The notes below the pieces were generated by a model that ran no database searches, was not told the DNA's origin, and saw nothing but the letters and a program-made list of their open reading frames with translations. The translations under genes were made by a program, and so were the position numbers. Shown here in pieces: positions 22,603 through 42,590 of a stretch of 64,000 nt of DNA (the first letter of the stretch is position 1; each line of letters begins with the position of its first letter). The stretch covers positions 248,001-312,000 of the IMG/VR virus record IMGVR_UViG_3300032770_000001. One strand, 5' to 3'.

Positions 22603-22965
22603 ATGGAGTGCCAATATCACAGATGCGGTAAGGAACTCATCGGCAGGCAGACGAAGTTCTGCTCTCCGAACTGTAAGAACAAAAACAATGTTCACCTTAG
22701 CCGTAGGCGGATGAAGCGTCGAGCAGTCGATTATCTCGGCGGAAAGTGTGTTGGGTGTGGGTATTCCAGATGTCTGGATGCCTTGGAATTCCACCACAAC
22801 TGTGATGAAAAAGAGACTGAAGTTTCAAAGATGATCGCCAATAACAGACCTTGGGAGGTCATCTTACAAGAATTGAAAAAGTGTGAGCTTAGGTGCGCCA
22901 ATTGCCACGCTGAGTATCATACATTAGGTGAGTTGGGAGAGAGGCTTATCCCGCTCGGTTGCTAA
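22603..22965 (+). CDS. HNH endonuclease (free-standing homing type)
   Basis: GGKCVGCGYSRCLDALEFHH...ELKKCELRCANCHAEYH; stop lies in the tRNA-Ser(GCT) anticodon loop. Confidence 0.85.
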   Translation: MECQYHRCGKELIGRQTKFCSPNCKNKNNVHLSRRRMKRRAVDYLGGKCVGCGYSRCLDALEFHHNCDEKETEVSKMIANNRPWEVILQELKKCELRCANCHAEYHTLGELGERLIPLGC

Positions 22966-23018
22966 CCGAGAGTCCCCCGCGAGGGGGACCGCAAGTTCGA
23001 ATCTTGCACTCACCGCCA
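22927..23018 (+). tRNA. tRNA-Ser(GCT)
   Basis: GGTGAGT/ACTCACC-G-CCA; CTCGG-TTGCTAA-CCGAG; long V arm. Confidence 0.95.
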
Positions 23019-23031
23019 AGTTTTGAAGTTT

Positions 23032-23121
23032 GGTGAGTTGGGAGAGTGGTTTAATCCGCCACGTTGGAAGCGTGGAGCACCCGTAAGGGTGCCGCAAGTT
23101 CGAATCTTGCACTCACCGCCA
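23032..23121 (+). tRNA. tRNA-Ser(GGA)
   Basis: CCACG-TTGGAAG-CGTGG; long V arm; GCCA end. Confidence 0.95.
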
Positions 23122-23135
23122 AATTTTTGAAGTAC

Positions 23136-23232
23136 GGTGGGGTTGGTACATGTGGCTTAGGTCCGCTCGTCTTGAAAACGAGTATACTTCAGAGATGGAG
23201 TATTGCCAGTTCAACTCTGGCTCCCACCGCCA
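23136..23232 (+). tRNA. tRNA-Ser(TGA)
   Basis: CTCGT-CTTGAAA-ACGAG; long V arm; atypical D arm. Confidence 0.9.
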
Positions 23233-23237
23233 AGTTT

Positions 23238-23333
23238 GGAGAGGTTGGTACATGTGGCAAGTCCGCTCGCCTCGAAAGCGAGTCACGGGGTTAATCACCC
23301 CGTGTGCAGGTTCGACTCCTGTCCTCTCCGCCA
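23238..23333 (+). tRNA. tRNA-Ser(CGA)
   Basis: CTCGC-CTCGAAA-GCGAG; long V arm; GCCA end. Confidence 0.92.
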
Positions 23334-23341
23334 TTTTACGT

Positions 23342-23419
23342 GCGCACGTGAAGGGAATTGGCATACCTTTCCCACTTAAAACGGGAAGCTTGTGGGTTCA
23401 ACTCCCACCGTGCGCACCA
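23342..23419 (+). tRNA. tRNA-Leu(TAA), short variable loop
   Basis: GCGCACG/CGTGCGC-A-CCA; loop CTTAAAA. Confidence 0.85.
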
Positions 23420-23549: not shown

Positions 23550-24056
23550 ATGGAACTCACCGACCGCGAATACTATCGAGCGCACATGGCGGAATATGCC
23601 AAAGACACGATGGTTCTGTCTTTCACGAAAACCAATCATCCCAGTTATCAGGCGATTCTTTCAATGGGCTCCCTTGCAGTTCCATTCTTACTTGAAGACG
23701 TGCAGTCACAGCACCCAGATGGATCATGGACGCCGGGAGAGCGGCAGTTCTCTTACTGGGGCGCAACTTCGTTGCTCTGGCAAATCACGGCAAAGTCAAT
23801 TAACACACCGCCTGCTCCAATTCTGCCGGAGAAGGATCGTGGTCGGCTGGCTCCGATTCGCAAGTTGTGGGTGGACTGGGGGATCGCGAATGGCTACCTA
23901 ACGCCGAATGACCCCAAGATTCCTCTTCGTTTCAATCAGGTTCACCGCTTTGTGCCGAAGCGGTTCTTCGGGCTCCGCAATTACATCTGGCGTCTGACCA
24001 CGCTGCCGAACAAGCATCGCATGAAACATTCATGGGACTACTGGAGAGCGATTTAA
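23550..24056 (+). CDS. hypothetical protein
   Basis: 168-aa ORF directly after a TG-TAGTAT element. Confidence 0.65.
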   Translation: MELTDREYYRAHMAEYAKDTMVLSFTKTNHPSYQAILSMGSLAVPFLLEDVQSQHPDGSWTPGERQFSYWGATSLLWQITAKSINTPPAPILPEKDRGRLAPIRKLWVDWGIANGYLTPNDPKIPLRFNQVHRFVPKRFFGLRNYIWRLTTLPNKHRMKHSWDYWRAI

Positions 24057-25186
24057 TGGGTAACTTCAAGCCGTTCAAGATTCTTTTCTCCGGGATGGGT
24101 ATCATTTTTCTTCTCATCCTTGGCTACCTCTTCCTGCACTGGGTCGGCGTACACGTCAGCTTCGTTGAGAGGCCGATTTCCGACAGCGACTTCAAGCAGT
24201 GGGTAATAGTCCTCCTCGTCGTCATCGCCTGCAAGAGCGGCGGCGATTGTAACTGCAACTGCAAGAAGGGCTGATATGGCGCTCCATCTATACGAGACCA
24301 ACGAGGGTTACATCTGCGACCACGGCAAGCCGGGATCGATGATGCTGGCTTCGGTCCCATTCATTGCTCACTGCGAAGAGTGCATCCGCAAGGCATTTGC
24401 TGAAGCTTTAGAGCGGACGTTGCGGGAAAACGGCTTCTCAACCCCTTAACTATAGGGGGTACTTTTCATGATCGCTGCTCTTTTGCTCTACTTTATCTCG
24501 CTGGCAATGCTCGGATTCACCGTGGGCTGTGGTGTTTATGCCTACAAAAAGTCCACCACCTACAACCAGTTCATGAATGAACATCCGATTTTGGGTTGGA
24601 CGGCTACGATCACGACAGCCGGACTGATTCTGTATGGAGAATTCCTGTTCCTTCTCTTGACGGTCGCCACGATCCTCGTTATGCTTGGACTAACCAATCT
24701 CGCAGTTCAGTAATAGGAGATCGAATGCCAGCAGCAACGAAGGATCACCGTAGCAAGAAGAACGCTCAGTCCCACGAGTCGCACCTTCGTCGGAAGCGTG
24801 AACTCAATGCCGCCAATACTACGGCGATTCAGTTCCAGCGCATCTATCGCATCAACTGTCTCAAGCAGCGCAAGGCAGAAGGTCGCCTGACCGAGAAGAA
24901 CGAAAAAGAGATCGTCTCCCTCGGCATCACTACGGAAGTGCATCTCAAGAATGGCATCTGAACTGGCAGTAATGCGGTTGGATCGCCTCCTCGATACTGA
25001 GGAGGGACGGCGGCTCCTGACTGATGCCGTGATGGAAATCATGCGGACACGCGCAACAGTCGATGTCGGGGCGGTTGCGGCGGATTTAGCTCCGATGCTG
25101 GATGCGCAGAAACTATCCTTCCTCGTGGAAGTGTTGCAGGAAGCCGCTCAACGTTCCGGAATCGCCATTACCCTCCCGAATCAAGC

Positions 25187-25501
25187 ATGACCACCGTCGT
25201 CCACGTCCGAAAATGCGATCCGCCTTTCGTCCAATTTACGTCCAATTTCGTCTACATCGGACGAGACTTTGACGGGTTCAAAGATGAGGGTTTTGGAAAT
25301 CCTTTCCATTTGGGTAAAGACGGGAACCGAAAAGAGGTATTAAGCAAATATAGGGCGTATGCCATTCACCGAATGCAGCACGACCCGGAGTTCTGGGCGC
25401 GAGTCAAGAACCTCAAGGACAAGACCCTCGGTTGCTGGTGTAAGCCTTATGATTGTCATGGAGATATTTTAGCGGAGTTGGCCTATGCGCTTTGGGTGTG
25501 A
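25187..25501 (+). CDS. DUF4326 family protein
   Basis: VYIGR...FGNPF...LKDKTLGCWCKPYDCHGDILAELA. Confidence 0.88.
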   Translation: MTTVVHVRKCDPPFVQFTSNFVYIGRDFDGFKDEGFGNPFHLGKDGNRKEVLSKYRAYAIHRMQHDPEFWARVKNLKDKTLGCWCKPYDCHGDILAELAYALWV

Positions 25502-25650
25502 ACCGGGTGATGGAAGCATTCATATTATCCTAGAAAATGGGGAAAAACTCCCCCCTCAGTGGAACGTTCCCGGCGTCTCCGTCATGGAAGAAGTCGCCCC
25601 GATTTGCGGCGGCACGCAATACCGGATGATTAAGCAGGAGGACGAAATCC

Positions 25651-26748
25651 TTGCAACGACGTAATTTTCTTCGCGGTCTACTTCTCGCTCCGCTTGCCGG
25701 ACTCTTCCCCACGTTCACGTGGGCTGAGGTCTGGAGCAAGTTCACTAACTGGGTTCCGGTACGATCACTTTCCAAAACTGAGCAACAATCTGAAATGCTC
25801 GGTAAGCTACTCAAGACCGCTGGAGGTCGGCAATTGCTTGCCGCATCTATCGGACCATCGATCCGCCGTCGTCGCGATTACACCAGTCTTATCCGCAAAG
25901 CGTTTCACACCCAAAATGATCCTGTCATTCGCAATGTGACAGAACAGGATTTGTACGTTGTTGGTGAAGAGGGCGGCGATATTATCCGGGTGAGCAACCC
26001 CAAGATAATCAATTTCCCGACGTTCCGCATCGTAAGCAACCCGATGATCCCGTACAGCGATGTCACCGGCAAGCGGTTCGACCTCGTCGCTCGTTGCCTC
26101 AACCTGTCCAAAGCAGAGATAGGTGCTTGCGAAGAGGGGTACATGTTCGCCTTAATGAACGCTGCCGCCGAGGGAGCAAACGCCGGGGGTGCGGGGAATC
26201 CCGATCTCCAGTATGAAGAGAGTCTCGAATTCCTCGAACCGATGAAAGCGCAATTCGCCAAACAGGGCGTCAAAGAGATCAACTTTGCGTTTGTCCATCC
26301 TCGCGATTTCGTCACCTTACTCAAGAACCAGACGTTTATGAATCACTTTGACCGGGAGACCAAACGTAGTTTCCTCAAAGCTGGCGTGATGGGTTACTAC
26401 CAGTTGGCAGATAAAGGCGCAGTCACTTTCATTCAGAACCGTAAGGTCACATACGGATACATCTACATCACAGGCAACACTCCGGCGACCGAAACAGAAC
26501 CAGCCGTTCACACTGGTTATGTCGTCGATCACGTTCCTCTGACCGTGCAATCGACAGATCGTCTTGATCTTGAACAGATCGGTTTCACGATCAGCGAAAA
26601 GGTCGGTTTCGCTTTGAATCCCATCGCCGTTCAACGTGTGAAGATTGCAACAGACAAACCTGTTGTTGAGCCCGTGGATGAAGGTGATGATTTAGACAAG
26701 ATTATCGACAAAACGGGCATCTACCCGTGGGCTGAAGTCAAAGCTTAA
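25651..26748 (+). CDS. major-capsid-protein-like paralogue with twin-arginine signal
   Basis: AGGAGG RBS; MQRRNFLRGLLLAPLAG...TWA; body (GRQLLAASI..RRRRDYTSLIRKAF, YVVGEEG, FRIVSNP, RFDLVAR) resembles large-phage HK97-fold capsid proteins, from recall. Confidence 0.65.
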   Translation: MQRRNFLRGLLLAPLAGLFPTFTWAEVWSKFTNWVPVRSLSKTEQQSEMLGKLLKTAGGRQLLAASIGPSIRRRRDYTSLIRKAFHTQNDPVIRNVTEQDLYVVGEEGGDIIRVSNPKIINFPTFRIVSNPMIPYSDVTGKRFDLVARCLNLSKAEIGACEEGYMFALMNAAAEGANAGGAGNPDLQYEESLEFLEPMKAQFAKQGVKEINFAFVHPRDFVTLLKNQTFMNHFDRETKRSFLKAGVMGYYQLADKGAVTFIQNRKVTYGYIYITGNTPATETEPAVHTGYVVDHVPLTVQSTDRLDLEQIGFTISEKVGFALNPIAVQRVKIATDKPVVEPVDEGDDLDKIIDKTGIYPWAEVKA

Positions 26749-26766: not shown

Positions 26767-26979
26767 ATGAGGGGGTACAGGACCGTGTCAATCATTCGTA
26801 TCGACAATCCAAAAATCTTCATCGGGCTCAGTCCCGATGAAGCCTCTAGCCAGATCAAATCGTGCGAGTACGACGTTCGCATAATCAACAAACTGGTGCC
26901 CTATAAGCCGGACTACGATCCGCTGCGTATCTGCCTCATTGTGGAGAAAGATAAGGTGATCGATGCTTTTGTCGGCTAA
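26767..26979 (+). CDS. peptidase inhibitor I78/potato-inhibitor-I-like small protein
   Basis: FIGLSPDEA...VRII...DYDPLRICLIVEKDKVIDAFVG. Confidence 0.55.
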   Translation: MRGYRTVSIIRIDNPKIFIGLSPDEASSQIKSCEYDVRIINKLVPYKPDYDPLRICLIVEKDKVIDAFVG

Positions 26980-27036: not shown

Positions 27037-27698
27037 ATGGGCATGAATGCTTATGTTCTCACCCAGATGGAGATGACGGGCGATGGTGAACAAGCTCACG
27101 TCGTCACGCGCAACCGCAGCGTTACGTTTGATGTCGAGAAGGCTCAGGCATGGGCGAATCAAGGTGTCGATTTCGATTACGAAACCTTCGACATCACCAC
27201 CGAGTCTATCGTCGCCGACGCGACCGGGCAACTCTCTCAAGCCATCGGTGAGGTCAAACAGCAAGCCATCGACTTGGGACAGGCATTCGATGAGGTAAAT
27301 CGTTTGATCCGGGAGTTGAAATGAGAACTGCGTGGGCAATCCTCTTCACCTTCGGAATTTTCCTCGCCGTCGCTGCCGTCCTGTTCATGATGGGCTTCGG
27401 CGCTTCCCGGTTGCCGGGCCCAGTCGGTGACCCCTTCTATTTCCGGCGTCGTAAAGCCGGGAATATTCTCTTCGGCATCGGCCTCATCTGCATCACGATC
27501 TCAGCGGCAATCATTTCTTTCGGGGTGCCGCGATGAGTTTCGCACGCCAAAAACTTCTTGAAGTCAAGAAAGAGTTCGGCGAACTCGTGAAGGTACTTCA
27601 CGACGATTGCGTATGCGTGCGTCCAGAATGCGGATGCGAAACATCTCGTCCGATTAACCGTATCCATGATCTGATCCAAGAACTTGAGGGAGAAATCC

Positions 27699-28442: not shown

Positions 28443-29925
28443 ATTGTTCCGATTCTTCGCTCTTTCGCTGATCTATCTGATTTTGATTTTCATCGCCCTC
28501 CCCCTGTGGTTGGAGGCGTTGCTGACACACAACCATCAGGAGTTGTGGTGGGCGAGTGTCGTAATCATCGCCGGACTTTTATCGTTGCCGTTCGAGTGGC
28601 AGCGTGCGAAAAAGGTCGGAATTATTGGCTGGCGTCCTCGGTAGGGATGGTATAATCTGGCTGGAGGAAACGTATGGAGATAGCCGAAGCATACCGCGAC
28701 ACCCGCGAGTTGACGCCGGAACTTCTGCTTGAACTCACGCAGTCGTATGAGTACCATGAAACCGACATGCACACCGGGTATCACACCGATTTGTGCGTAA
28801 CCGAACGGGATATCGAGGTCATGGCTGAGTCGATGAAGAGCATCCTGTTCTTCGTGACGCCTGCATGTATGAGAGCGGCGATGGAACTGGCGCGGGATCG
28901 AGGTAAGCTGATCGGCAGCCGCCGTTGGCTTAAGGAATAACATGGCAAACATCAGCGAGGTCGGTCGCGACATCGGCTCCATGCTGTTCGGTCTGGGTGT
29001 GGCGATGGCCGTTGGCACCATAGCGGGGCTGCTTTTCTATCGGGCATACCCGGCGTTCGGGTCTGGCAATGCGGTAGGAATCGGTTTTGTGCTCGGCGGC
29101 GGTGCGGGGCTGGCTCTCGGTTCCCTGACATGGATGTTCATTCAATGGTCGAACAAGGAATAGCGATGGCTCAGATGCGAGTAGCGAGGAACGGCTGGAT
29201 CGACGATCAGGGGCGCGTTCTTGCTCTGTTCGGCAATCCGGATGCCTCCCAGTTTCTTTTCGACCTTCTAACCGACGAACAGGCACAAAAGTTTCTGGAG
29301 TTCATGAAAGAAAACGCCTTCGTCCGGCAACAGGTTTGCTCTGAATGCCAGACCGAACTGTTCGCCGGAAACAACATCTGCCCCAAGTGTGGGCTCGACA
29401 ACGAGGACAAGTAATGGCGATGGAAGGCTGGAACTGGATACACGGCTCCCCAAAGTGGCACTATTTCTTGGAAGATGGTCGAGCGATTTGTCGTAAGTGG
29501 ATGACGTTTGGTGATAACTCCGACGCTCAGCAGGGCAACGATACCAGCCCGGACAATTGCAAAGCGTGCCGGAAGGCTCTGGAGAAGAGGGCGGCAAAGG
29601 CGGCGAAATGAAGCAGACGCAAATTCAGGAAATGTCGCGGATGCGAAAAGCAGTCGAACTTGCCGAGCAGAACTTGGCTCGGAAGCGCACGTCTCTCATT
29701 ATCCTGCGGAACAAATGCGATCACCGCTTCTCCAATCGCCGGAGCGCAATGAAAGTCATGTCCACGCACAACGACCGCACTTGCGGGGGCTGGAAAGAGT
29801 GTGCTGTCTGTGCCGGAGAACTACCGGAGACCTTCGTCGAGGTCTGTCGCATCTGTCAACATCATGGCGAAGAATTCAGGGAACAACCGCCGCTGGCAAA
29901 ACCAATCAGGCTGTAAGGGGGATTT

Positions 29926-31650: not shown

Positions 31651-32980
31651 CGTGAAGCTGTCTAAGATCGGTATAGGTGCAATGATCGTCGCCGCTGGCG
31701 GCGGTGTCCTCTGGTTAATCTCCCACTGCAATCACAAATTCACCCGCCCGTTCAGCAACACCCCGTGGCGTCGAAAGCAGACCTACGTGGTATGCATCAA
31801 ATGCGGCGGGGAGTACGAGTACGACGCTGAACTCATGGAAGTCGGCAAACGGCTACCGAATATCGTTGACTCGGCTCCGAAACATACCGTAATCTAGGGA
31901 CATGTTTCCCACAATCAACATCCCCCAAGCACTCAGCGTCTATGACGATCTGGTTAAGGCGTACTACGGAGACAACCGCTACGGCGGTAACGTTGCTGAA
32001 ATCTATGCCAGCCGTTGCACGGAGTACAGCGCCTCGATCTACTGTGCAGTCGGAGCCGCTGACCTTCACAAAGATGGGTTTCTTTACGACGCTCTGTTAG
32101 AGTTCACCAAGAGCGCCGGGGACAACCTGTTCTCGATCATCGAACTGTTTAAGCAGCACTACCCGGACGCCAAAGTCCATATTCAAGGGTGGGTGGGGCC
32201 GAAGAGTCGCGAAGTCTGGCGCATTCCCCGTATCGGATTACGGGGCGGATTCAACCATCGAGTTCATGTCCGGGTCACGCATCCGGGTCAGAAAATCCAC
32301 GGCGAATGATCTGGCTGGCAAATGTTGCTCTCTTTCTCGCGCTCTGGCTGATCGGGAGAAAAACCTTCCGAACGGGCTATACTTTGGGCGTAATCGGGAG
32401 TATCCTGTACGCAGTGGTTTCGATTCAGATTCATCGTTGGGATTTTGCGTCATTCAACATAGCGATGACCCTGCTTAATGGGTGGAATTTATGTCAGAAC
32501 TGGAACAAGACTGGAAAGACCGCTGTGACAAAATCGGAGTTGATCCCTTGACGACATCAGGAACCCCGCAAGATCAAATGATGTTCCCGGAGAAGGCGAC
32601 CTATGAGGTAATGCCTTCGCGAGAGCCGCAGAAAGAACCTCGCAAGCTAGAATTTCTATTCGCTGACGTTATGGGCGTCTGGTATTCCGCCCCGGAGACG
32701 TGGGTGCGCATGGATGGCTCCGAGAAAAAGCATGTAGAGCCGGGTCAGATCGGACTGCACATCAAGTGGGGAGCCAAGAACTACGGCTTCGGCGAGTACA
32801 TCGTGCGGTTCATGACGGACGGTACGATCAAGGTGCATGACGAGTATGGCGGGCCGAATTTCTCGCAACAGCTTTTCGCATTCATCGGTGAACAGATTGC
32901 CAAAGGCGAACACGACCGCGAGAGAGACGCGAAGGAAACAAAATCGCTGGCAGAACTAGCGAAGGAAGTCGAAGAATCGA

Positions 32981-35826: not shown

Positions 35827-35914
35827 TGGGCGATGGTGTAATTGGCAACACACTTGGCTCTGAACCAAGGGACTGATAAAGCTTGTGGAGGTTCGAGTCC
35901 TCCTCGCCCAGCCA
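35827..35914 (+). tRNA. tRNA-Gln(CTG) with extended variable region
   Basis: TGGGCGA/TCGCCCA-G-CCA; CTTGG-CTCTGAA-CCAAG. Confidence 0.88.
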
Positions 35915-36028
35915 ATATTGCAATAGGACTGGATACTTGCCGAGAAAGGGTACGGCGTTCGCGTCGGAGAGTATTTCGGGTGTCGAGAAGCCAGCCTTAC
36001 GGCTACAATCCGTGAAAGCCGTTTCGAT

Positions 36029-36105
36029 GGTGGGCGTAGTTCAACTGGTAGAACGCAGGATTGTGGCTCCTGTAGTTGCGGGTTCGAATCCCGTCGCCCA
36101 CCCCA
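36029..36105 (+). tRNA. tRNA-His(GTG), encoded G-1
   Basis: CAGGA-TTGTGGC-TCCTG; G-1:C73. Confidence 0.95.
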
Positions 36106-36116
36106 AGTTTAGATGT

Positions 36117-36192
36117 GGTGTCATTAGCCAAGAGGTAAGGCAAGAGGTTGTGGCCCTCTCATGCGTCGGTTCGATCCCGACATGACACCCCA
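36117..36192 (+). tRNA. tRNA-His(GTG) second copy, encoded G-1
   Basis: AGAGG-TTGTGGC-CCTCT; G-1:C73. Confidence 0.92.
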
Positions 36193-36230
36193 AGTTTTGA
36201 GGAGATAGCAGATTGGATCGACATAGTAAC

Positions 36231-36306
36231 GGGCTTATAGCTCAGAAGGAAGAGCACTGGAATCCGAATCCAGAGGTCGGCGGTTCGAGTCCGCCTAAGC
36301 CCTCCA
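36231..36306 (+). tRNA. tRNA-Arg(CCG)
   Basis: CTGGA-ATCCGAA-TCCAG; GGGCTTA/TAAGCCC. Confidence 0.92.
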
Positions 36307-36317
36307 GAGTTTTGCAA

Positions 36318-36464
36318 GTGATCGCTGGCAGTCCGATTGATTTTGACTGCCCTCTTTGCGGCAAGCCGAAAGGCGTACCCTGCAAAGTCAGGATCGTGGA
36401 AGAGCAGATCGTAGAGATCGACTTCCATCTTGACCGCAAAAAGTTGACAAGATTGTCCGCATAG
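36318..36464 (+). CDS. small zinc-finger protein ending inside tRNA-Arg(ACG)
   Basis: CPLC..PC..H; the TAG stop is tRNA positions 8-10. Confidence 0.5.
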   Translation: MIAGSPIDFDCPLCGKPKGVPCKVRIVEEQIVEIDFHLDRKKLTRLSA

Positions 36465-36531
36465 CTCAACTGGATAGAGCGCGTGCCTACGAAGCATGAG
36501 GTTGGGGGTTCGAGTCCCTCTGTGGACACCA
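36455..36531 (+). tRNA. tRNA-Arg(ACG)
   Basis: CGTGC-CTACGAA-GCATG; canonical D and T arms. Confidence 0.95.
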
Positions 36532-36536
36532 TATCA

Positions 36537-36611
36537 GGGGTGTATTGTCGGTTCGAATCCGGCTGGTCGTGGGTTTCACGATCATAGGCTCAAATGGTCA
36601 ACCAACGCCCC
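36537..36611 (+). ncRNA. circularly permuted tRNA-like RNA (YrlA/Y-RNA-like module)
   Basis: closing stem GGGGTGT/ACGCCCC; T arm GTCGG-TTCGAAT-CCGGC; loop-closed acceptor stem TGGTCGT/ACGATCA; D-like arm. Confidence 0.7.
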
Positions 36612-36622
36612 GTCGTTTTTAT

Positions 36623-36709
36623 GCCTCCGTGTCGGCAACTGGATGCCACCCTCGCTACGAACGAGGAGCCCGAAAGGGAATGCAGGTTCGAGTCCTGTCG
36701 GGGGTTCCA
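36623..36709 (+). tRNA. atypical tRNA-Arg(ACG) with long variable arm
   Basis: CCTCG-CTACGAA-CGAGG; V arm CCC-GAAA-GGG; TCCA end. Confidence 0.82.
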
Positions 36710-36920
36710 TTTTGAAGTATTGAAGAGTATGAGCAGACTTGAAGAGTTGTACGCGCAGTTGGAAAAGACGGAGCCCGGATCGCCGGAATCGAAAACAATA
36801 GCGGAAAAGATTCTGGAAGAGGTCTTCGGCGGCGTCCCGGAAGGGAAAGAAGGCGCGACTGTTCATGCTCCGGGTTGTAAGTGTGGTTGGTGTTTGATGG
36901 GAGATACAAAGTTTTAACAC

Positions 36921-37007
36921 TGGGATGTAGACCGTAATTGGTAGCGGGCGTGGCTGTTAACCACGTGCAGAAATGCCTTGTAGGTTCGAGCCCTACCGTC
37001 CCAGCCA
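36921..37007 (+). tRNA. tRNA-Asn(GTT) with long variable arm
   Basis: CGTGG-CTGTTAA-CCACG; V arm GCA-GAAA-TGC. Confidence 0.88.
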
Positions 37008-37013
37008 GATTTT

Positions 37014-37089
37014 TCCGGGGTAGCTCAGCGGTAGTAGCGTCCGGCTGTTAACCGGATGGTCGCAGGTTCGATCCCTGCCCCCGGAGCCA
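37014..37089 (+). tRNA. tRNA-Asn(GTT)
   Basis: TCCGG-CTGTTAA-CCGGA; canonical. Confidence 0.95.
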
Positions 37090-37346
37090 AGATGTAAACG
37101 TGCGGTTGGGGAGCGGAGCCCTCGGCGAGGGTGGAAAGCCTAAACTCCGCTCCCCGCTGTGGGGGCTGGGTCGCCTGTATAGCGCCACTCCTCATGCTTA
37201 GGGCACGGGATGTCGTTTTCGAAGACTTCTAGGATTGGAATTGGGATGTGGCACTCGCAAAGCAGGATCGCAAAGTAGCGTTCCTCACCGTCTTCGGTTT
37301 TTGCGTAGGCACCACAGACCTGCATACTTAAAGAATACCAAAGTTT

Positions 37347-37423
37347 GGGTGCGTCGTATAGCGGCTGATTATATTCCCCTCTTAAGGGACTTGACGTTGG
37401 TTCAAATCCAACCGCACCCACCA
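37347..37423 (+). tRNA. tRNA-Lys(CTT)
   Basis: GGGTGCG/CGCACCC-A-CCA; loop CTCTTAA. Confidence 0.9.
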
Positions 37424-37443
37424 AGTTTGTGGTATTGTGTAGT

Positions 37444-37605
37444 ATGGCTTTTACCAAGGAACAACTCGAAGCACTGGCTGCTCCATTGCGGCATGTGATT
37501 TTCGACAAGGACACCATCGCGTACCTTGAATGGGTTAGAGATAACCCAAACGAGTGGGCACAGATGATGCAGCAGCGCGATAAAGAACGACAATTGGGGG
37601 GTTAG
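37444..37605 (+). CDS. 53-aa hypothetical protein ending inside tRNA-Lys(CTT)
   Basis: MAFTKEQLEALAAPLRH...QLGG; the TAG stop is tRNA positions 8-10; TGG-TATTGT element just upstream. Confidence 0.55.
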   Translation: MAFTKEQLEALAAPLRHVIFDKDTIAYLEWVRDNPNEWAQMMQQRDKERQLGG

Positions 37606-37671
37606 CTCAACTGGCAGAGCAGGGGCCTCTTAAGCCTCAGGTTGCGGGTTCGACTCCCGTGCCCCTCACCA
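37596..37671 (+). tRNA. tRNA-Lys(CTT) second copy
   Basis: GGGGC-CTCTTAA-GCCTC; canonical D and T arms. Confidence 0.93.
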
Positions 37672-41047: not shown

Positions 41048-41123
41048 GACCCCGTAGCTCAGATGGAAGAGCGGTGCGGTCCTAACGCACAGGTCGAGAG
41101 TTCGAATCTCTCCGGGGTCTCCA
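41048..41123 (+). tRNA. tRNA-Arg(CCT)
   Basis: GTGCG-GTCCTAA-CGCAC; GACCCCG/CGGGGTC. Confidence 0.92.
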
Positions 41124-41290
41124 AGTTATGAACTGGATGTGGCTTTGCAGGATTGGTTTTCACGATTGGGTGTATTCAGTGTTTCGTCCTGTTGCACCTG
41201 AATGTGGTGGTGCCGTACCTTGCTACTACGAGAAACGCTGTGAGCGTTGCGGTCTCGAAGAGAAGGGCGAGGGTTGGTTTTAGGGGGCGT

Positions 41291-41509
41291 ATGCCTACTT
41301 TGGTGATTGAGTTCAATCGCAAGATGAATGACATCCTCCAGCAGATGGCGGATGAGAAGGGCACGACCAAGGTAGATATCATCCGGCGTGCCGTGGCGTT
41401 GTACAAGTACCTGACTAACGAACTAGCCTGTCGCCGTAAGGGTGACACGCCGAAGAAGTTGGTCATTCGCCGGGGCGATCTGATCTTGAAAGAAGTCGTA
41501 TTGCCGTGA
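41291..41509 (+). CDS. ribbon-helix-helix (CopG-like) DNA-binding protein
   Basis: LVIEF...LQQMADEKGTTKVDIIRRAVALY. Confidence 0.75.
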   Translation: MPTLVIEFNRKMNDILQQMADEKGTTKVDIIRRAVALYKYLTNELACRRKGDTPKKLVIRRGDLILKEVVLP

Positions 41510-42025
41510 GTCTTGAGTGCAGTGAGTGCGAACGCGATCTGCGCGGTCCTCATGCTGAGGATTGCTCAAGATACACGCCGCCAAGGGCTTGCAAGTGGTG
41601 CCCTCATGATGAATACGACCATGATGAGGAAGATTGGTGCTGGAAATGCGGCACCTTCGGCCCGTGTAGATTCTTTGAACCAGCTTCCTGAACCCTTAAA
41701 TAGGGGGCATGATGAAGCTGACGGAGTACGTGATTATCGCGGAACCGTTCGATACCTCAGACCTGACCTCGACGTTCTATGAGTCGGGCATAGACGAGGA
41801 AGACGCTCTGAAACAGTTCCGCAAGAAGCACCCAACGATGCGGGTGCAGGAAGTTCGGGAGCGGTAAATGGGCAAAAGGAAGCCGCAACCAAAGATCAAG
41901 TTTGTGTGCAAGTTGTGCGGTAAAGATGCGCCGAAGGATGAAGCTCAGTCCAATGAAAATTGGACAGTAGTTAGTACGACCTGTCCATGCGGCGGCACCA
42001 TGAAGATTGTTGTAGAATAAAGTTT

Positions 42026-42099
42026 AGCCCTGTCGTTCAACGGTAGGACATCTGCCTCTGGAGCAGAGTATCGGGGTTCGAATCCCTGTGGGGCTGCCA
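42026..42099 (+). tRNA. tRNA-Gln(CTG)
   Basis: TCTGC-CTCTGGA-GCAGA; GCCA end. Confidence 0.9.
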
Positions 42100-42100
42100 A

Positions 42101-42221
42101 GTGTACTCATGGGGGAAGCGAGTCGCCCCGTCCTCATGGGCATTAGAGGCGGCAGTTATCGCTCACTGTCGGAGCGGCAAAACGTCAGGATGTAAACGTG
42201 ACAGCCCGGAGAGACGGGCAC
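42101..42221 (+). ncRNA. structured RNA, possibly c4-antisense-like
   Basis: several hairpins ending GTGACAGCCCGGAGAGACGGGCAC, which resembles the c4 RNA 3' end as I recall it. Confidence 0.35.
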
Positions 42222-42344
42222 TTAAAGAGACCATGAACACTGCAATCAATCTCGTCGCAATGGCCTGCTTCGTAGCGGGTATGGTCGTATTCTATCTTGC
42301 ACTGACCTCCCTTCCCCTCAGACGAAAACGTTAACCACAAACGT

Positions 42345-42428
42345 GGGGGCGTAGTCGGGGGGCTCTTCTAAAGCCTTAGCCGTAAACCGGAACTGCGAAT
42401 GCGAGTTCGAATCTCGCCGCCCCTTCCA
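42345..42428 (+). tRNA. D-armless tRNA-Arg(TCT)-like RNA
   Basis: GGGGGCG/CGCCCCT-T-CCA; GGGCT-CTTCTAA-AGCCT; canonical T arm; only 7-8 nt in place of the D arm. Confidence 0.7.
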
Positions 42429-42439
42429 TATTTTTCTTT

Positions 42440-42514
42440 GGGAGTATCGTCTAATGTCAAGACCCCCGCCTTTTAAGCGGGCCGATCTCGGTTCGAATCC
42501 GGGTGCTCCCACCA
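42440..42514 (+). tRNA. tRNA-Lys(TTT)
   Basis: CCCGC-CTTTTAA-GCGGG; ACCA end. Confidence 0.92.
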
Positions 42515-42516
42515 AT

Positions 42517-42590
42517 GGGGGCGTAGCTCAGCGTAGAGCAGCGGGCTTTTAACCCGAAGCGCGTGGAATCAATCCCCACCGCCCCCACCA
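42517..42590 (+). tRNA. tRNA-Lys(TTT) with non-canonical T loop
   Basis: loop CTTTTAA; T loop reads ATCAATC; GGGGGCG/CGCCCCC-A-CCA. Confidence 0.78.

What the first reader, a model, noticed from the sequence alone, without database searches (positions are those of the whole stretch)
25651..26748. Capsid-protein paralogue fused to a twin-arginine (Tat) signal peptide
A strong AGGAGG RBS supports the start MQRRNFLRGLLLAPLAGLFPTFTWA (RRxFL, hydrophobic core, TWA cleavage-like site). The remainder resembles large-phage major capsid proteins (from recall). The gene lies outside any structural module in this window. Inference: a repurposed capsid fold exported to the envelope, for example for superinfection exclusion, or as a decoy for capsid-sensing defences.
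Basis: partly seen in the sequence, partly recalled or inferred. Interest (0 to 1): 0.68.

Follow-up and report, generated by a model that had tools for sequence, protein, structure and literature searches.

The report
Capsid-protein duplicate carrying a Tat export signal
A 456-kb wetland phage carries, far from its head genes, a spare copy of its own capsid protein with a conserved twin-arginine export signal, so a capsid-fold protein is probably sent to the host's cell envelope, which the literature I could search does not describe.

Summary
Window 25651-26748 (+) is a 365-aa ORF with a TTG start 9 nt after AGGAGG. Residues 1-25 (MQRRNFLRGLLLAPLAGLFPTFTWA) have the full layout of a Tat signal. 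Residues 38-332 are an HK97-fold capsid domain (AF2 pLDDT 89; phage G gp27, PDB 6wkk, E 2e-13).

- The fold is HK97.
- Orthologues start with ATG at the same position.
- The genome has a separate canonical capsid gene (genome 430604-431563, next-but-three to the head protease; 70% identical to the Acidobacteriota jumbo phage Tunturi_5 MCP).

The Tat-like signal recurs in all 8 known members of this type (26-56% identity; M1, R3, R4 and F6 invariant). Seven of them fall in a well-supported clade beside the canonical capsid proteins.

The gene is accessory. Two complete relatives (463 and 332 kb) have only the canonical gene. One of them keeps the flanking genes without the paralogue.

Export itself, and the role in the envelope, are inferred and not shown. 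My best guess is a Tat-exported periplasmic factor, possibly for superinfection exclusion. HMM scores for the Tat signal are below the curated cut-offs, the host is unknown, and there are no RNA or proteome data. I rate it a new variant of a known kind, moderately to highly interesting.

The parts
25636..25641 (+). Shine-Dalgarno AGGAGG, 9 nt before the start codon
   Evidence: Read directly. Orthologues have GGAG/GGAGG before their ATG at the same position.
25651..25725 (+). TTG start and Tat-type signal peptide, residues 1-25: n-region with R3-R4, h-region 9-25, predicted cleavage T-W-A|E after residue 25
   Evidence: Pfam TAT_signal residues 1-19, E 8e-4, 19.7 bits, below the cut-off. Layout table. 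M1, R3, R4 and F6 are invariant in the 8 Tat-type homologues. It is the only such N-terminus in the genome.
25726..25761 (+). Variable linker, residues 26-37, between the signal and the capsid domain
   Evidence: Length and sequence vary among homologues (alignment A2). pLDDT is about 60. It has no counterpart in the canonical MCP.
25762..26646 (+). HK97-fold capsid domain, residues 38-332 (N-arm helices, E-loop hairpin, spine helix 144-177, P and A domains)
   Evidence: phrog_2522 E 4.4e-16. 6wkk gp27 E 2.3e-13. AF2 pLDDT above 90 over this span. Foldseek matches to HK97 and encapsulins. The N-arm is 75% identical to the canonical MCP and the A-domain about 35%.
26647..26748 (+). C-terminal tail, residues 333-365 (acidic, ends ...IYPWAEVKA), plus the stop codon
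   Evidence: Absent from P0003-5. A similar ...PW(E/D)... tail is present in the non-Tat sisters P0006-8. pLDDT is 42-75.
25485..25664 (+). Upstream 59-aa ORF overlapping the target's start by 14 nt (possible translational coupling)
   Evidence: An orthologue sits at the same place in L008 (63 aa), but a different protein sits there in L009. No Pfam hit.
25187..25501 (+). DUF4326 gene, the conserved upstream neighbour
   Evidence: PF14216 E 1.1e-22. It holds the same position in L008, L009 and L101.
26785..26979 (+). Conserved downstream neighbour: 64-aa protein resembling potato-inhibitor-I (CI-2/eglin) serine-protease inhibitors, with no signal peptide
   Evidence: PF00280 E 0.036, 15.2 bits, below the cut-off. 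Orthologues occur in L008, L009, L101 and G001. It is present in G001 without the capsid paralogue, so it is not obligately linked to it.

Best explanation
This is an accessory duplicate of the phage's own HK97-fold major capsid protein that has gained a genuine twin-arginine (Tat) signal peptide.

Proposed mechanism:
1. The gene is transcribed within a long same-strand run of small non-structural genes. Many of these encode small membrane proteins.
2. The protein folds in the cytoplasm.
3. Its RRNFLR motif is recognised by the host TatBC receptor. The phage has no TatC of its own.
4. The folded monomer is moved across the inner membrane, and signal peptidase cuts after Ala25 (TWA|E).
5. The mature capsid-fold protein then acts in the periplasm or envelope, not in the virion shell.

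What is shown: the fold, the paralogy, the conserved signal layout, the accessory status and the non-structural location.

What is inferred: export and cleavage.

What is speculative (about 0.2): the role. I favour superinfection exclusion. The paralogue keeps the capsid N-arm almost unchanged (75% identity) while the A-domain has diverged. It could therefore still bind partners of the capsid N-arm or inner surface, such as ejection or internal head proteins of incoming kin phages, and trap them in the periplasm.

Sub-probabilities: real Tat targeting about 0.65; not a shell building block about 0.75.
For: - Signal layout: RR at residues 3-4, a 17-residue uncharged h-region with mean KD 1.39 (too weak for a membrane helix, typical of Tat), and a small-x-small site ending at residue 25. 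The best 19-residue hydrophobicity is 1.28, against 1.8 or more for the local membrane proteins.
- Conservation: 8 homologues at 26-56% identity all begin M-[QED]-R-R-x-F-[LIF]. All have a candidate cleavage site after residue 25, and 6 of 8 have a Lys in the c-region. M1, R3, R4 and F6 are invariant while the following linker varies in length and sequence.
- Start codon: orthologues use ATG with an RBS at this position.
- Specificity: it is the only hit to this layout in six frames of the 456-kb genome, and related loci give almost only its homologues.
- A second Tat-signal gene (156 aa, MERRNFLRL...) sits directly upstream of the Tat-type homologue in L010.
- Canonical MCP elsewhere: genome 430604-431563 (-), downstream of a head-maturation protease. 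It scores phrog_2522 E 7e-42 and NCBIfam 124.9 bits (cut-off 80), against 47 bits for the target.
- Phylogeny: 7 of the 8 Tat-type proteins lie in a 12-member clade with 98% support, sister to the canonical MCPs of this phage group.
- Accessory status: complete relatives G001 (463 kb) and G002 (332 kb) have only the canonical MCP. G001 keeps the downstream neighbours without the paralogue.
- Local context: 6 of 25 genes within 6 kb encode small membrane proteins, against 40 of 521 genome-wide.
Against: - No experiment shows export.
- The Pfam TAT_signal score is below the gathering score (19.7 against 22.7 bits). TIGR01409 gives no hit for the target, and five of the seven other Tat-type homologues give no Tat HMM hit at all.
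- The target itself lacks the c-region Lys.
- Five members of the same paralogue clade (P0006-8, P0066, P0095) have no Tat signal. P0006 sits at the syntenic position. The clade's shared function therefore cannot depend on export.
- The host is unknown, so a host Tat system is assumed. Relatedness to an Acidobacteriota phage is the only clue.
- HK97-fold monomers usually have floppy N-arms and E-loops, and Tat quality control might reject them (my own knowledge).
- The superinfection-exclusion role has no direct support.
Confidence: 0.5

Rival explanations
1. Minor virion protein. The paralogue is a specialised shell subunit (vertex or penton, or portal-proximal, like T4 gp24 beside gp23). Its N-terminal 25-37 residues are a propeptide removed by the head protease, or a membrane tether for prohead initiation. 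The likeness to a Tat signal has no export meaning.
For: - It is a full-length HK97 domain with an intact, highly conserved N-arm and E-loop tip, GEEGGD.
- The phage has a head-maturation protease that could trim N-termini.
- In L011 the Tat-type gene lies directly after another MCP paralogue, as gp23 and gp24 do in T4.
- Very large capsids often use extra MCP-like proteins (my own knowledge).
Against: - It is absent from two complete relatives with closely similar canonical MCPs, and absent from the cultured relative Tunturi_5, which has one place only.
- It lies 157 kb from the head module among non-structural genes.
- A propeptide has no reason to keep RR-x-F-L, an uncharged h-region, a c-region Lys and a small-x-small site across 26-56% identity.
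- It has lost the LPxGxLPxYD motif shared by canonical MCPs, including phage G.
Confidence: 0.15
2. The Tat signal is real, but the protein is not released. Either the uncleaved signal anchors it to the inner membrane (as in bacterial Rieske proteins), or the protein engages TatBC without passing and so blocks host Tat export as a host-takeover device.
For: - The same signal evidence as the main explanation.
- The cleavage site is only predicted. In P0010 and P0067 the position-25 site is poor.
- If the protein oligomerises like a capsomer it would be too large for Tat (my own knowledge).
- The local context is membrane-rich.
Against: - The h-region is weakly hydrophobic (mean KD 1.0-1.9) and short for a stable anchor.
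- Most members have a plausible small-x-small site at the same distance.
- There is no evidence of oligomerisation; the trimer prediction gave no verdict.
Confidence: 0.12
3. Cytoplasmic decoy or regulator. The paralogue clade acts in the cytoplasm, for example by soaking up capsid-sensing defence proteins or modulating head assembly. The N-terminal peptide is a lineage-specific add-on without export function.
For: - Five clade members, including the syntenic orthologue P0006, lack any signal.
- The conserved N-arm could mimic the canonical MCP.
- The known capsid sensors are cytoplasmic (my own knowledge).
Against: - It does not explain why 8 divergent proteins keep a complete Tat layout.
- It does not explain why a second Tat-signal gene is adjacent in L010.
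- A hydrophobic N-terminus would be a liability for a soluble cytoplasmic decoy.
Confidence: 0.1
4. A decaying duplicate or mis-called ORF with no function.
For: It scores far below the canonical MCP on every capsid model.
Against: - The frame is intact, with a strong RBS.
- The predicted fold is confident.
- Homologues occur in at least 8 clusters, with conserved motifs and conserved synteny.
- An identical copy is present in a second IMG/VR record (L013).
Confidence: 0.03

Closest known systems
Major capsid proteins of phage-G-like and Tunturi_5-like giant myoviruses (PDB 6wkk gp27; NCBIfam NF042927 capsid_Caudo_2; phrog_2522; Pfam PF25209 Phage_capsid_4)
   Same: Same HK97 fold and clear sequence homology over residues 38-332. 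The N-arm motif GRxxLAxSxGPSxRRRRDY is nearly identical to that of the phage's own MCP.
   Different: - Carries a 25-residue Tat-type signal plus a linker.
- Falls below the curated cut-offs (47 against 80 bits; no PF25209 hit).
- Lacks the LPxGxLPxYD motif and the group-specific E-loop insertion.
- Has an extra insertion in the A/P region and a C-terminal tail.
- Lies outside the head module and is dispensable in relatives.
T4 gp24 (vertex protein, paralogue of the MCP gp23)
   Same: A second HK97-fold paralogue of the MCP encoded in the same large myovirus genome.
   Different: By my own knowledge, gp24 is adjacent to gp23, is a conserved virion component, and has a short protease-cleaved N-terminus rather than a signal peptide. 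Here the gene is distant from the head module, accessory, and Tat-tagged.
[quoted passage not shown]
   Same: An HK97-fold shell protein that carries an N-terminal export or targeting signal, which the authors describe as 'reminiscent of twin-arginine peptides'.
   Different: cEnc is cellular, belongs to the encapsulin family, is fused to a cytochrome domain, has a cargo operon, and its printed signal has no RR pair. The present protein is phage-encoded, derives from the phage's own MCP, and has a canonical RRxFL motif. No relatives were found in 185,579 species genomes.
Phage superinfection-exclusion proteins that act in the envelope (T4 Sp and Imm, T5 Llp, HK97 gp15, TP-J34 Ltp)
   Same: Exported or membrane-located accessory phage proteins without enzymatic domains, encoded outside structural modules (my own knowledge). 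This is the proposed functional analogy only.
   Different: There is no sequence or fold relation. None is known to be Tat-dependent or capsid-derived. The function here is untested.

Membership tests
HK97-fold major capsid protein (capsid_Caudo_2 / phrog_2522 / Phage_capsid_4) | HK97 fold (N-arm, E-loop, spine helix, P and A domains) | tested here: met
   AF2 pLDDT 89, pTM 0.80. Foldseek gives 303 PDB matches at E<=1e-3, led by HK97, other phage capsids and encapsulins.
HK97-fold major capsid protein (capsid_Caudo_2 / phrog_2522 / Phage_capsid_4) | Significant sequence homology to an experimentally solved MCP | tested here: met
   6wkk_A phage G gp27: E 2.3e-13 with the protein alone and E 7e-108 with the family profile.
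HK97-fold major capsid protein (capsid_Caudo_2 / phrog_2522 / Phage_capsid_4) | Reaches the curated family score cut-off | tested here: not met
   NF042927 gives 47 bits against a cut-off of 80, while the genome's canonical MCP scores 124.9. Pfam reports no capsid family at E<=1.
HK97-fold major capsid protein (capsid_Caudo_2 / phrog_2522 / Phage_capsid_4) | Encoded in the head-morphogenesis module | tested here: not met
   The head protease and canonical MCP lie at genome 430-437 kb. The target lies at 273.6 kb among DUF4326, RlaP, tRNAs and small ORFs.
HK97-fold major capsid protein (capsid_Caudo_2 / phrog_2522 / Phage_capsid_4) | Essential: present in every complete relative | tested here: not met
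   G001 (463 kb, 100% complete) and G002 (332 kb, 100% complete) have one MCP each, of the canonical type. Tunturi_5 has one.
HK97-fold major capsid protein (capsid_Caudo_2 / phrog_2522 / Phage_capsid_4) | Forms the virion shell | not testable with these tools
   The phage is uncultured and there is no proteome. The homotrimer prediction gave no verdict.
Tat (twin-arginine) signal peptide | Twin-arginine motif (S/T)-R-R-x-F-L-K near the N-terminus | tested here: met
   Q-R-R-N-F-L-R at residues 2-8. R3, R4 and F6 are invariant in 8 homologues.
Tat (twin-arginine) signal peptide | Uncharged, only moderately hydrophobic h-region of about 12-20 residues | tested here: met
   17 residues with mean KD 1.39; homologues have 12-13 residues with mean KD 1.0-1.9. 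This is below the level of the local transmembrane helices.
Tat (twin-arginine) signal peptide | c-region with a small-x-small signal-peptidase site | tested here: met
   T-W-A|E after residue 25. A candidate site lies at the same distance in all 8 homologues. This is a pattern match only; no SignalP or TatP was available.
Tat (twin-arginine) signal peptide | Basic 'Sec-avoidance' residue in the c-region | tested here: not met
   The target has none (FPTFTWA). 6 of 8 homologues have a Lys at about position 21.
Tat (twin-arginine) signal peptide | Reaches the curated HMM cut-off (PF10518 / TIGR01409) | tested here: not met
   PF10518 gives 19.7 bits against 22.7. TIGR01409 gives no hit for the target. 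These short models are insensitive.
Tat (twin-arginine) signal peptide | Tat-dependent translocation; the host has TatABC | not testable with these tools
   The phage encodes no TatC. The host is unidentified; by inference it is an Acidobacteriota-like diderm.
Encapsulin | Cellular gene with an adjacent cargo gene bearing a targeting peptide | tested here: not met
   No relative was found in 185,579 bacterial and archaeal species genomes. All contexts are huge-phage contigs. The protein is nearest to phage MCPs on the tree.
T4 gp24-type vertex paralogue | MCP paralogue adjacent to the MCP gene and conserved among relatives | tested here: not met
   Paralogy is met. It lies 157 kb away from the MCP gene and is absent from complete relatives.

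The most novel reading that the evidence does not exclude
A phage exports a folded copy of its own capsid protein through the host Tat pathway. In the periplasm the protein either self-assembles into a capsid-like lattice or shell (a virus-made, encapsulin-like envelope compartment), or captures the ejection or internal-head proteins of incoming kin phages. The second option would be a capsid-mimic mechanism of superinfection exclusion. Either would be the first HK97-fold protein shown to work outside the cytoplasm.
Probability: 0.12. Interest if true: 0.85.

Novelty: new variant of a known kind. Interest (0 to 1): 0.62.

Why it matters
HK97-fold proteins are known as cytoplasmic shell builders: phage and herpesvirus capsids, and encapsulins. 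A conserved, textbook Tat signal on a duplicated capsid protein would mean this fold has been recruited for a job in the cell envelope. It would widen what huge phages are known to send into the host envelope.

It also gives a clean, cheap experiment: RR-to-KK mutants and tatC controls. A cultured relative and its host (Tunturi 5 on Tunturiibacter) could be used to test an exclusion phenotype.

For annotation, it warns that 'major head protein' hits in huge phages can be accessory, non-virion paralogues. In the held library of papers I found no description of a Tat-tagged capsid protein.

Tried and rejected
- Complex prediction, three copies of residues 38-335: no verdict (score 0.00). This is not evidence either way.
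- Tat HMMs: Pfam TAT_signal and TIGR01409 are sub-threshold or silent for the target and most homologues. I therefore rely on the motif layout and its conservation.
- TatC in the phage genome: none.
- GTDB genome scan for relatives: the first alignment was too diverse. The second found none, so there is no host clue from prophages and no cellular homologues.
- Sequencing runs: only wetland DNA metagenomes hold the stretch, and no RNA runs. Expression was not assessed and read laying was not used.
- Promoter and terminator scan: uninformative.
- Profile search of 5.8 billion proteins with the Tat-type alignment: no new Tat-type members, only canonical MCPs.
- Rejected idea, 'the E-loop is deleted in the target'. 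The region between the N-arm and PTFxI is 39 residues, against 44 in phage G and 58 in the canonical paralogue. The target's hairpin is therefore kept. Only P0035 and P0067 lack it.
- Rejected idea, 'the inhibitor-like downstream gene is functionally tied to the paralogue'. G001 has the inhibitor-like gene without the paralogue.
- ESM Atlas feature search: only phage-capsid clusters, scores below 0.9.

Full report
**Where the window lies.** The window is bases 248001-312000 of a single 455,708-bp IMG/VR virus record that CheckV rates 100% complete. Its first and last 149 bp overlap with one mismatch, so the assembly is in effect circular. GC content is 53.7%. The stretch occurs in wetland DNA metagenomes, and no RNA run holds it.

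**The observation.**
- The ORF at window 25651-26748 (+) encodes 365 aa. It starts with TTG, and AGGAGG lies at 25636-25641, 9 nt upstream.
- Residues 1-25 read MQRRNFLRGLLLAPLAGLFPTFTWA. This gives a twin-arginine motif (RRNFLR against the consensus RRxFLK), a 17-residue uncharged h-region of moderate hydrophobicity (mean Kyte-Doolittle 1.39), and T-W-A before Glu26.
- Pfam reports only TAT_signal over residues 1-19, at E 8e-4 and 19.7 bits. This is below the 22.7-bit gathering score.
- The layout is not a chance match. A six-frame scan of the whole genome finds only this gene. A relaxed scan of 679 kb of related loci finds only its homologues, one neighbouring gene of a homologue, and one Sec-like protease.

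**The capsid domain.** Several independent lines show that residues 38-332 are an HK97-fold capsid domain:
- PHROG phrog_2522 'major head protein', E 4.4e-16.
- NCBIfam capsid_Caudo_2, E 1.6e-12.
- The solved phage G capsid protein gp27 (PDB 6wkk), E 2.3e-13 with the protein alone and 7e-108 with a 72-sequence family profile.
- An AlphaFold2 model from that alignment, with pLDDT 89 and pTM 0.80. pLDDT is above 90 across the domain and about 60 over residues 1-40.
- Foldseek, with 303 PDB matches at E<=1e-3, led by HK97, other phage capsids and encapsulins.

**It is a paralogue, and the true capsid gene is elsewhere.**
- The genome holds a second, stronger match at 430604-431563 (-): 319 aa, 51% identical to the target, beginning MAQLSRTQQQTQMLGQ. 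That start aligns with residue 38 of the target, so this copy has no N-terminal extension.
- This gene scores phrog_2522 at E 7e-42 and passes the NCBIfam equivalog cut-off (124.9 against 80 bits). The target scores 47 bits.
- It lies in a minus-strand run with a head-maturation protease (phrog_18299) and large unannotated proteins.
- It is 70% identical to the major head protein gp334 of Tunturiibacter phage Tunturi_5, a 309-kb jumbo myovirus of Acidobacteriota from tundra soil. Tunturi_5 has the same protease-to-capsid arrangement (PMC11924767).
- By inference only, the host is therefore an Acidobacteriota-like diderm.

**The start codon and the signal are conserved.**
- Searches of 5.8 billion and 1.8 billion protein sets gave eight Tat-type clusters: P0002 (this gene), P0003, P0004, P0005, P0010, P0011, P0035 and P0067. 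They are 26-56% identical to the target.
- All begin M-[QED]-R-R-x-F-[LIF], then 12-17 uncharged residues. Six have a Lys near position 21, the classical Sec-avoidance position. All have a small-x-small candidate site ending at residue 25.
- M1, R3, R4 and F6 are invariant, while the linker that follows varies in length and sequence.
- Where DNA is available, the orthologues start with ATG preceded by GGAG or GGAGG at exactly this position. This rules out the downstream start at M49.
[quoted passage not shown] That makes two adjacent Tat-tagged genes.

**Evolution.**
- A maximum-likelihood tree of the core domain places seven of the eight Tat-type proteins in a clade of 12 with 98% SH-aLRT support.
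- That clade is sister to the canonical capsid proteins of this phage group. The eighth protein, P0067, sits on a very long branch nearby.
- The clade also holds five proteins without a Tat signal: P0006-8, P0066 and P0095. The label therefore needs at least three changes on the tree.
- P0006 occupies the same syntenic slot as the target (DUF4326, paralogue, 64-aa gene) but has an acidic, non-Tat N-terminus.
- The simplest reading is one duplication of the capsid gene. The signal was then either gained early and lost or replaced in some lines, or gained more than once.
- Against the canonical copy, the N-arm (residues 41-80) and the start of the spine helix are 75% identical. The A-domain is about 35% identical.
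- The paralogue clade has lost the LPxGxLPxYD motif that canonical members share with phage G. It has gained an insertion near residues 276-288.

**Accessory status.**
- Two complete relatives, G001 (463 kb) and G002 (332 kb), contain only the canonical gene.
- G001 keeps the target's downstream neighbours, the inhibitor-like 68-aa gene and the next gene, but has no capsid paralogue before them.
- The order DUF4326, small ORF, paralogue, 64-aa gene is kept in L008 and L009, and in L101 without the small ORF.
- In L102 and L103 the Tat-type gene sits in a different place, beside a papain-like peptidase. In L011 it follows another divergent capsid paralogue.
- No relative exists in 185,579 bacterial and archaeal species genomes.

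**Local context.**
- The neighbours are non-structural: DUF4326, RlaP, a zinc-ribbon protein, tRNA arrays and many ORFs without matches.
- Six of 25 genes within 6 kb encode small proteins with a strong hydrophobic helix, against 40 of 521 genome-wide.
- The phage has no TatC, so any export would use the host machinery.

**Interpretation.**
- Shown: this is a conserved, accessory, non-module paralogue of the capsid protein with a complete Tat-signal layout.
- Inferred: it is exported folded by host Tat and cleaved after Ala25.
- Speculative: its job. Phage accessory proteins that act in the envelope without enzymatic domains are most often superinfection-exclusion factors (my own knowledge). 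The near-unchanged N-arm suggests it may still bind partners of the capsid's N-arm or inner face, such as ejected head proteins of incoming kin phages. I give this role about 0.2.
- The main rival is a minor virion subunit whose N-terminus is a propeptide. That reading is weakened by the gene's absence from complete relatives, by its location, and by the specificity of the signal layout.
- The non-Tat members of the clade are the strongest caution. Whatever the clade does does not always need export.

**Literature.** The held literature has no Tat-tagged capsid protein. [quoted passage not shown]

**What gave nothing.**
- The trimer prediction gave no verdict.
- Expression could not be assessed, because no RNA runs hold the stretch.
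- SignalP and TatP were not available.

**Verdict.** I rate it a new variant of a known kind, with interest 0.62.

Noticed in passing
window 26785-26979 (+) (longest ORF from 26767): A 64-aa protein ending ...DYDPLRICLIVEKDKVIDAFVG resembles potato-inhibitor-I (CI-2/eglin c) serine-protease inhibitors. PF00280 gives E 0.036, below the cut-off. It has no signal peptide. Orthologues occur in L008, L009, L101 and G001 (L104 1498-1704). A CI-2-type inhibitor would be an unusual phage gene.
   Followed up: partly
window 22927-23419, 35827-37671, 41048-42590: There are 19 tRNA genes in three arrays on the + strand, including four tRNA-Ser in a row and duplicated His, Asn, Lys and Arg. This is typical of huge phages.
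   Followed up: no
whole genome G000: first and last 149 bp: The contig ends overlap by 149 bp with a single mismatch. The record labelled 'linear' is therefore probably a closed circular assembly, or has a short terminal repeat.
   Followed up: partly
protein family (P0023, P0032, P0036 ... 26 of 72 full-length members): A large branch of the same capsid family carries a different conserved N-terminal extension: M-[DN]-R-[YF]-x-I-x-x-G-K-x-PPPP followed by a Lys-rich stretch. It could be a built-in scaffold or a DNA-facing domain. It is unexplained.
   Followed up: no
L010 1160-1630 and 6574-7503: In the contig of the Tat-type homologue P0035, the upstream 156-aa gene has its own Tat signal (MERRNFLRLAGAAIALPMLPAFAVA). 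A trypsin-like protease 4 kb downstream has a Sec-like signal (MRRFLITSILVLLACVAVG). Together they suggest a small island of exported proteins in a related huge phage.
   Followed up: partly
L102 13651-16086 (-) and 8777-9592 (-): Next to the Tat-type homologue P0011, a huge-phage contig encodes an 811-aa protein with Vault_3 and MVP_shoulder domains (like the major vault protein) and a papain-like Peptidase_C1. No homologue of the vault-like protein is found in this genome.
   Followed up: no
genome G000 401018-401515 (+) (L007 1018-1515) and 342046-342384 (-); L010 5239-5526: Short proteins of 95-165 aa resemble only the A-domain part (query residues about 203-277) of the capsid protein: E 3.5e-5 and 0.06 in this genome, with a weak phrog_544 hit. 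These phages therefore also carry capsid-fragment paralogues.
   Followed up: partly
window 24032-24274, 24468-24713, 27321-27536, 28444-28644, 28942-29163, 31652-31897: Six small ORFs (66-81 aa), each with a strong hydrophobic helix, surround the target. Genome region 240-300 kb holds 17 of the 40 such genes in the genome.
   Followed up: partly
L011 2-616 and 627-1589: Two divergent capsid paralogues lie in tandem. The second is the Tat-type P0067. The first is cut by the contig end, so its N-terminus is unknown.
   Followed up: partly
proteins P0179, P0198: Some canonical capsid proteins of this group carry an extra Gly/Thr-rich insertion of about 60 residues in the A-domain. It may be a built-in decoration domain.
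   Followed up: no
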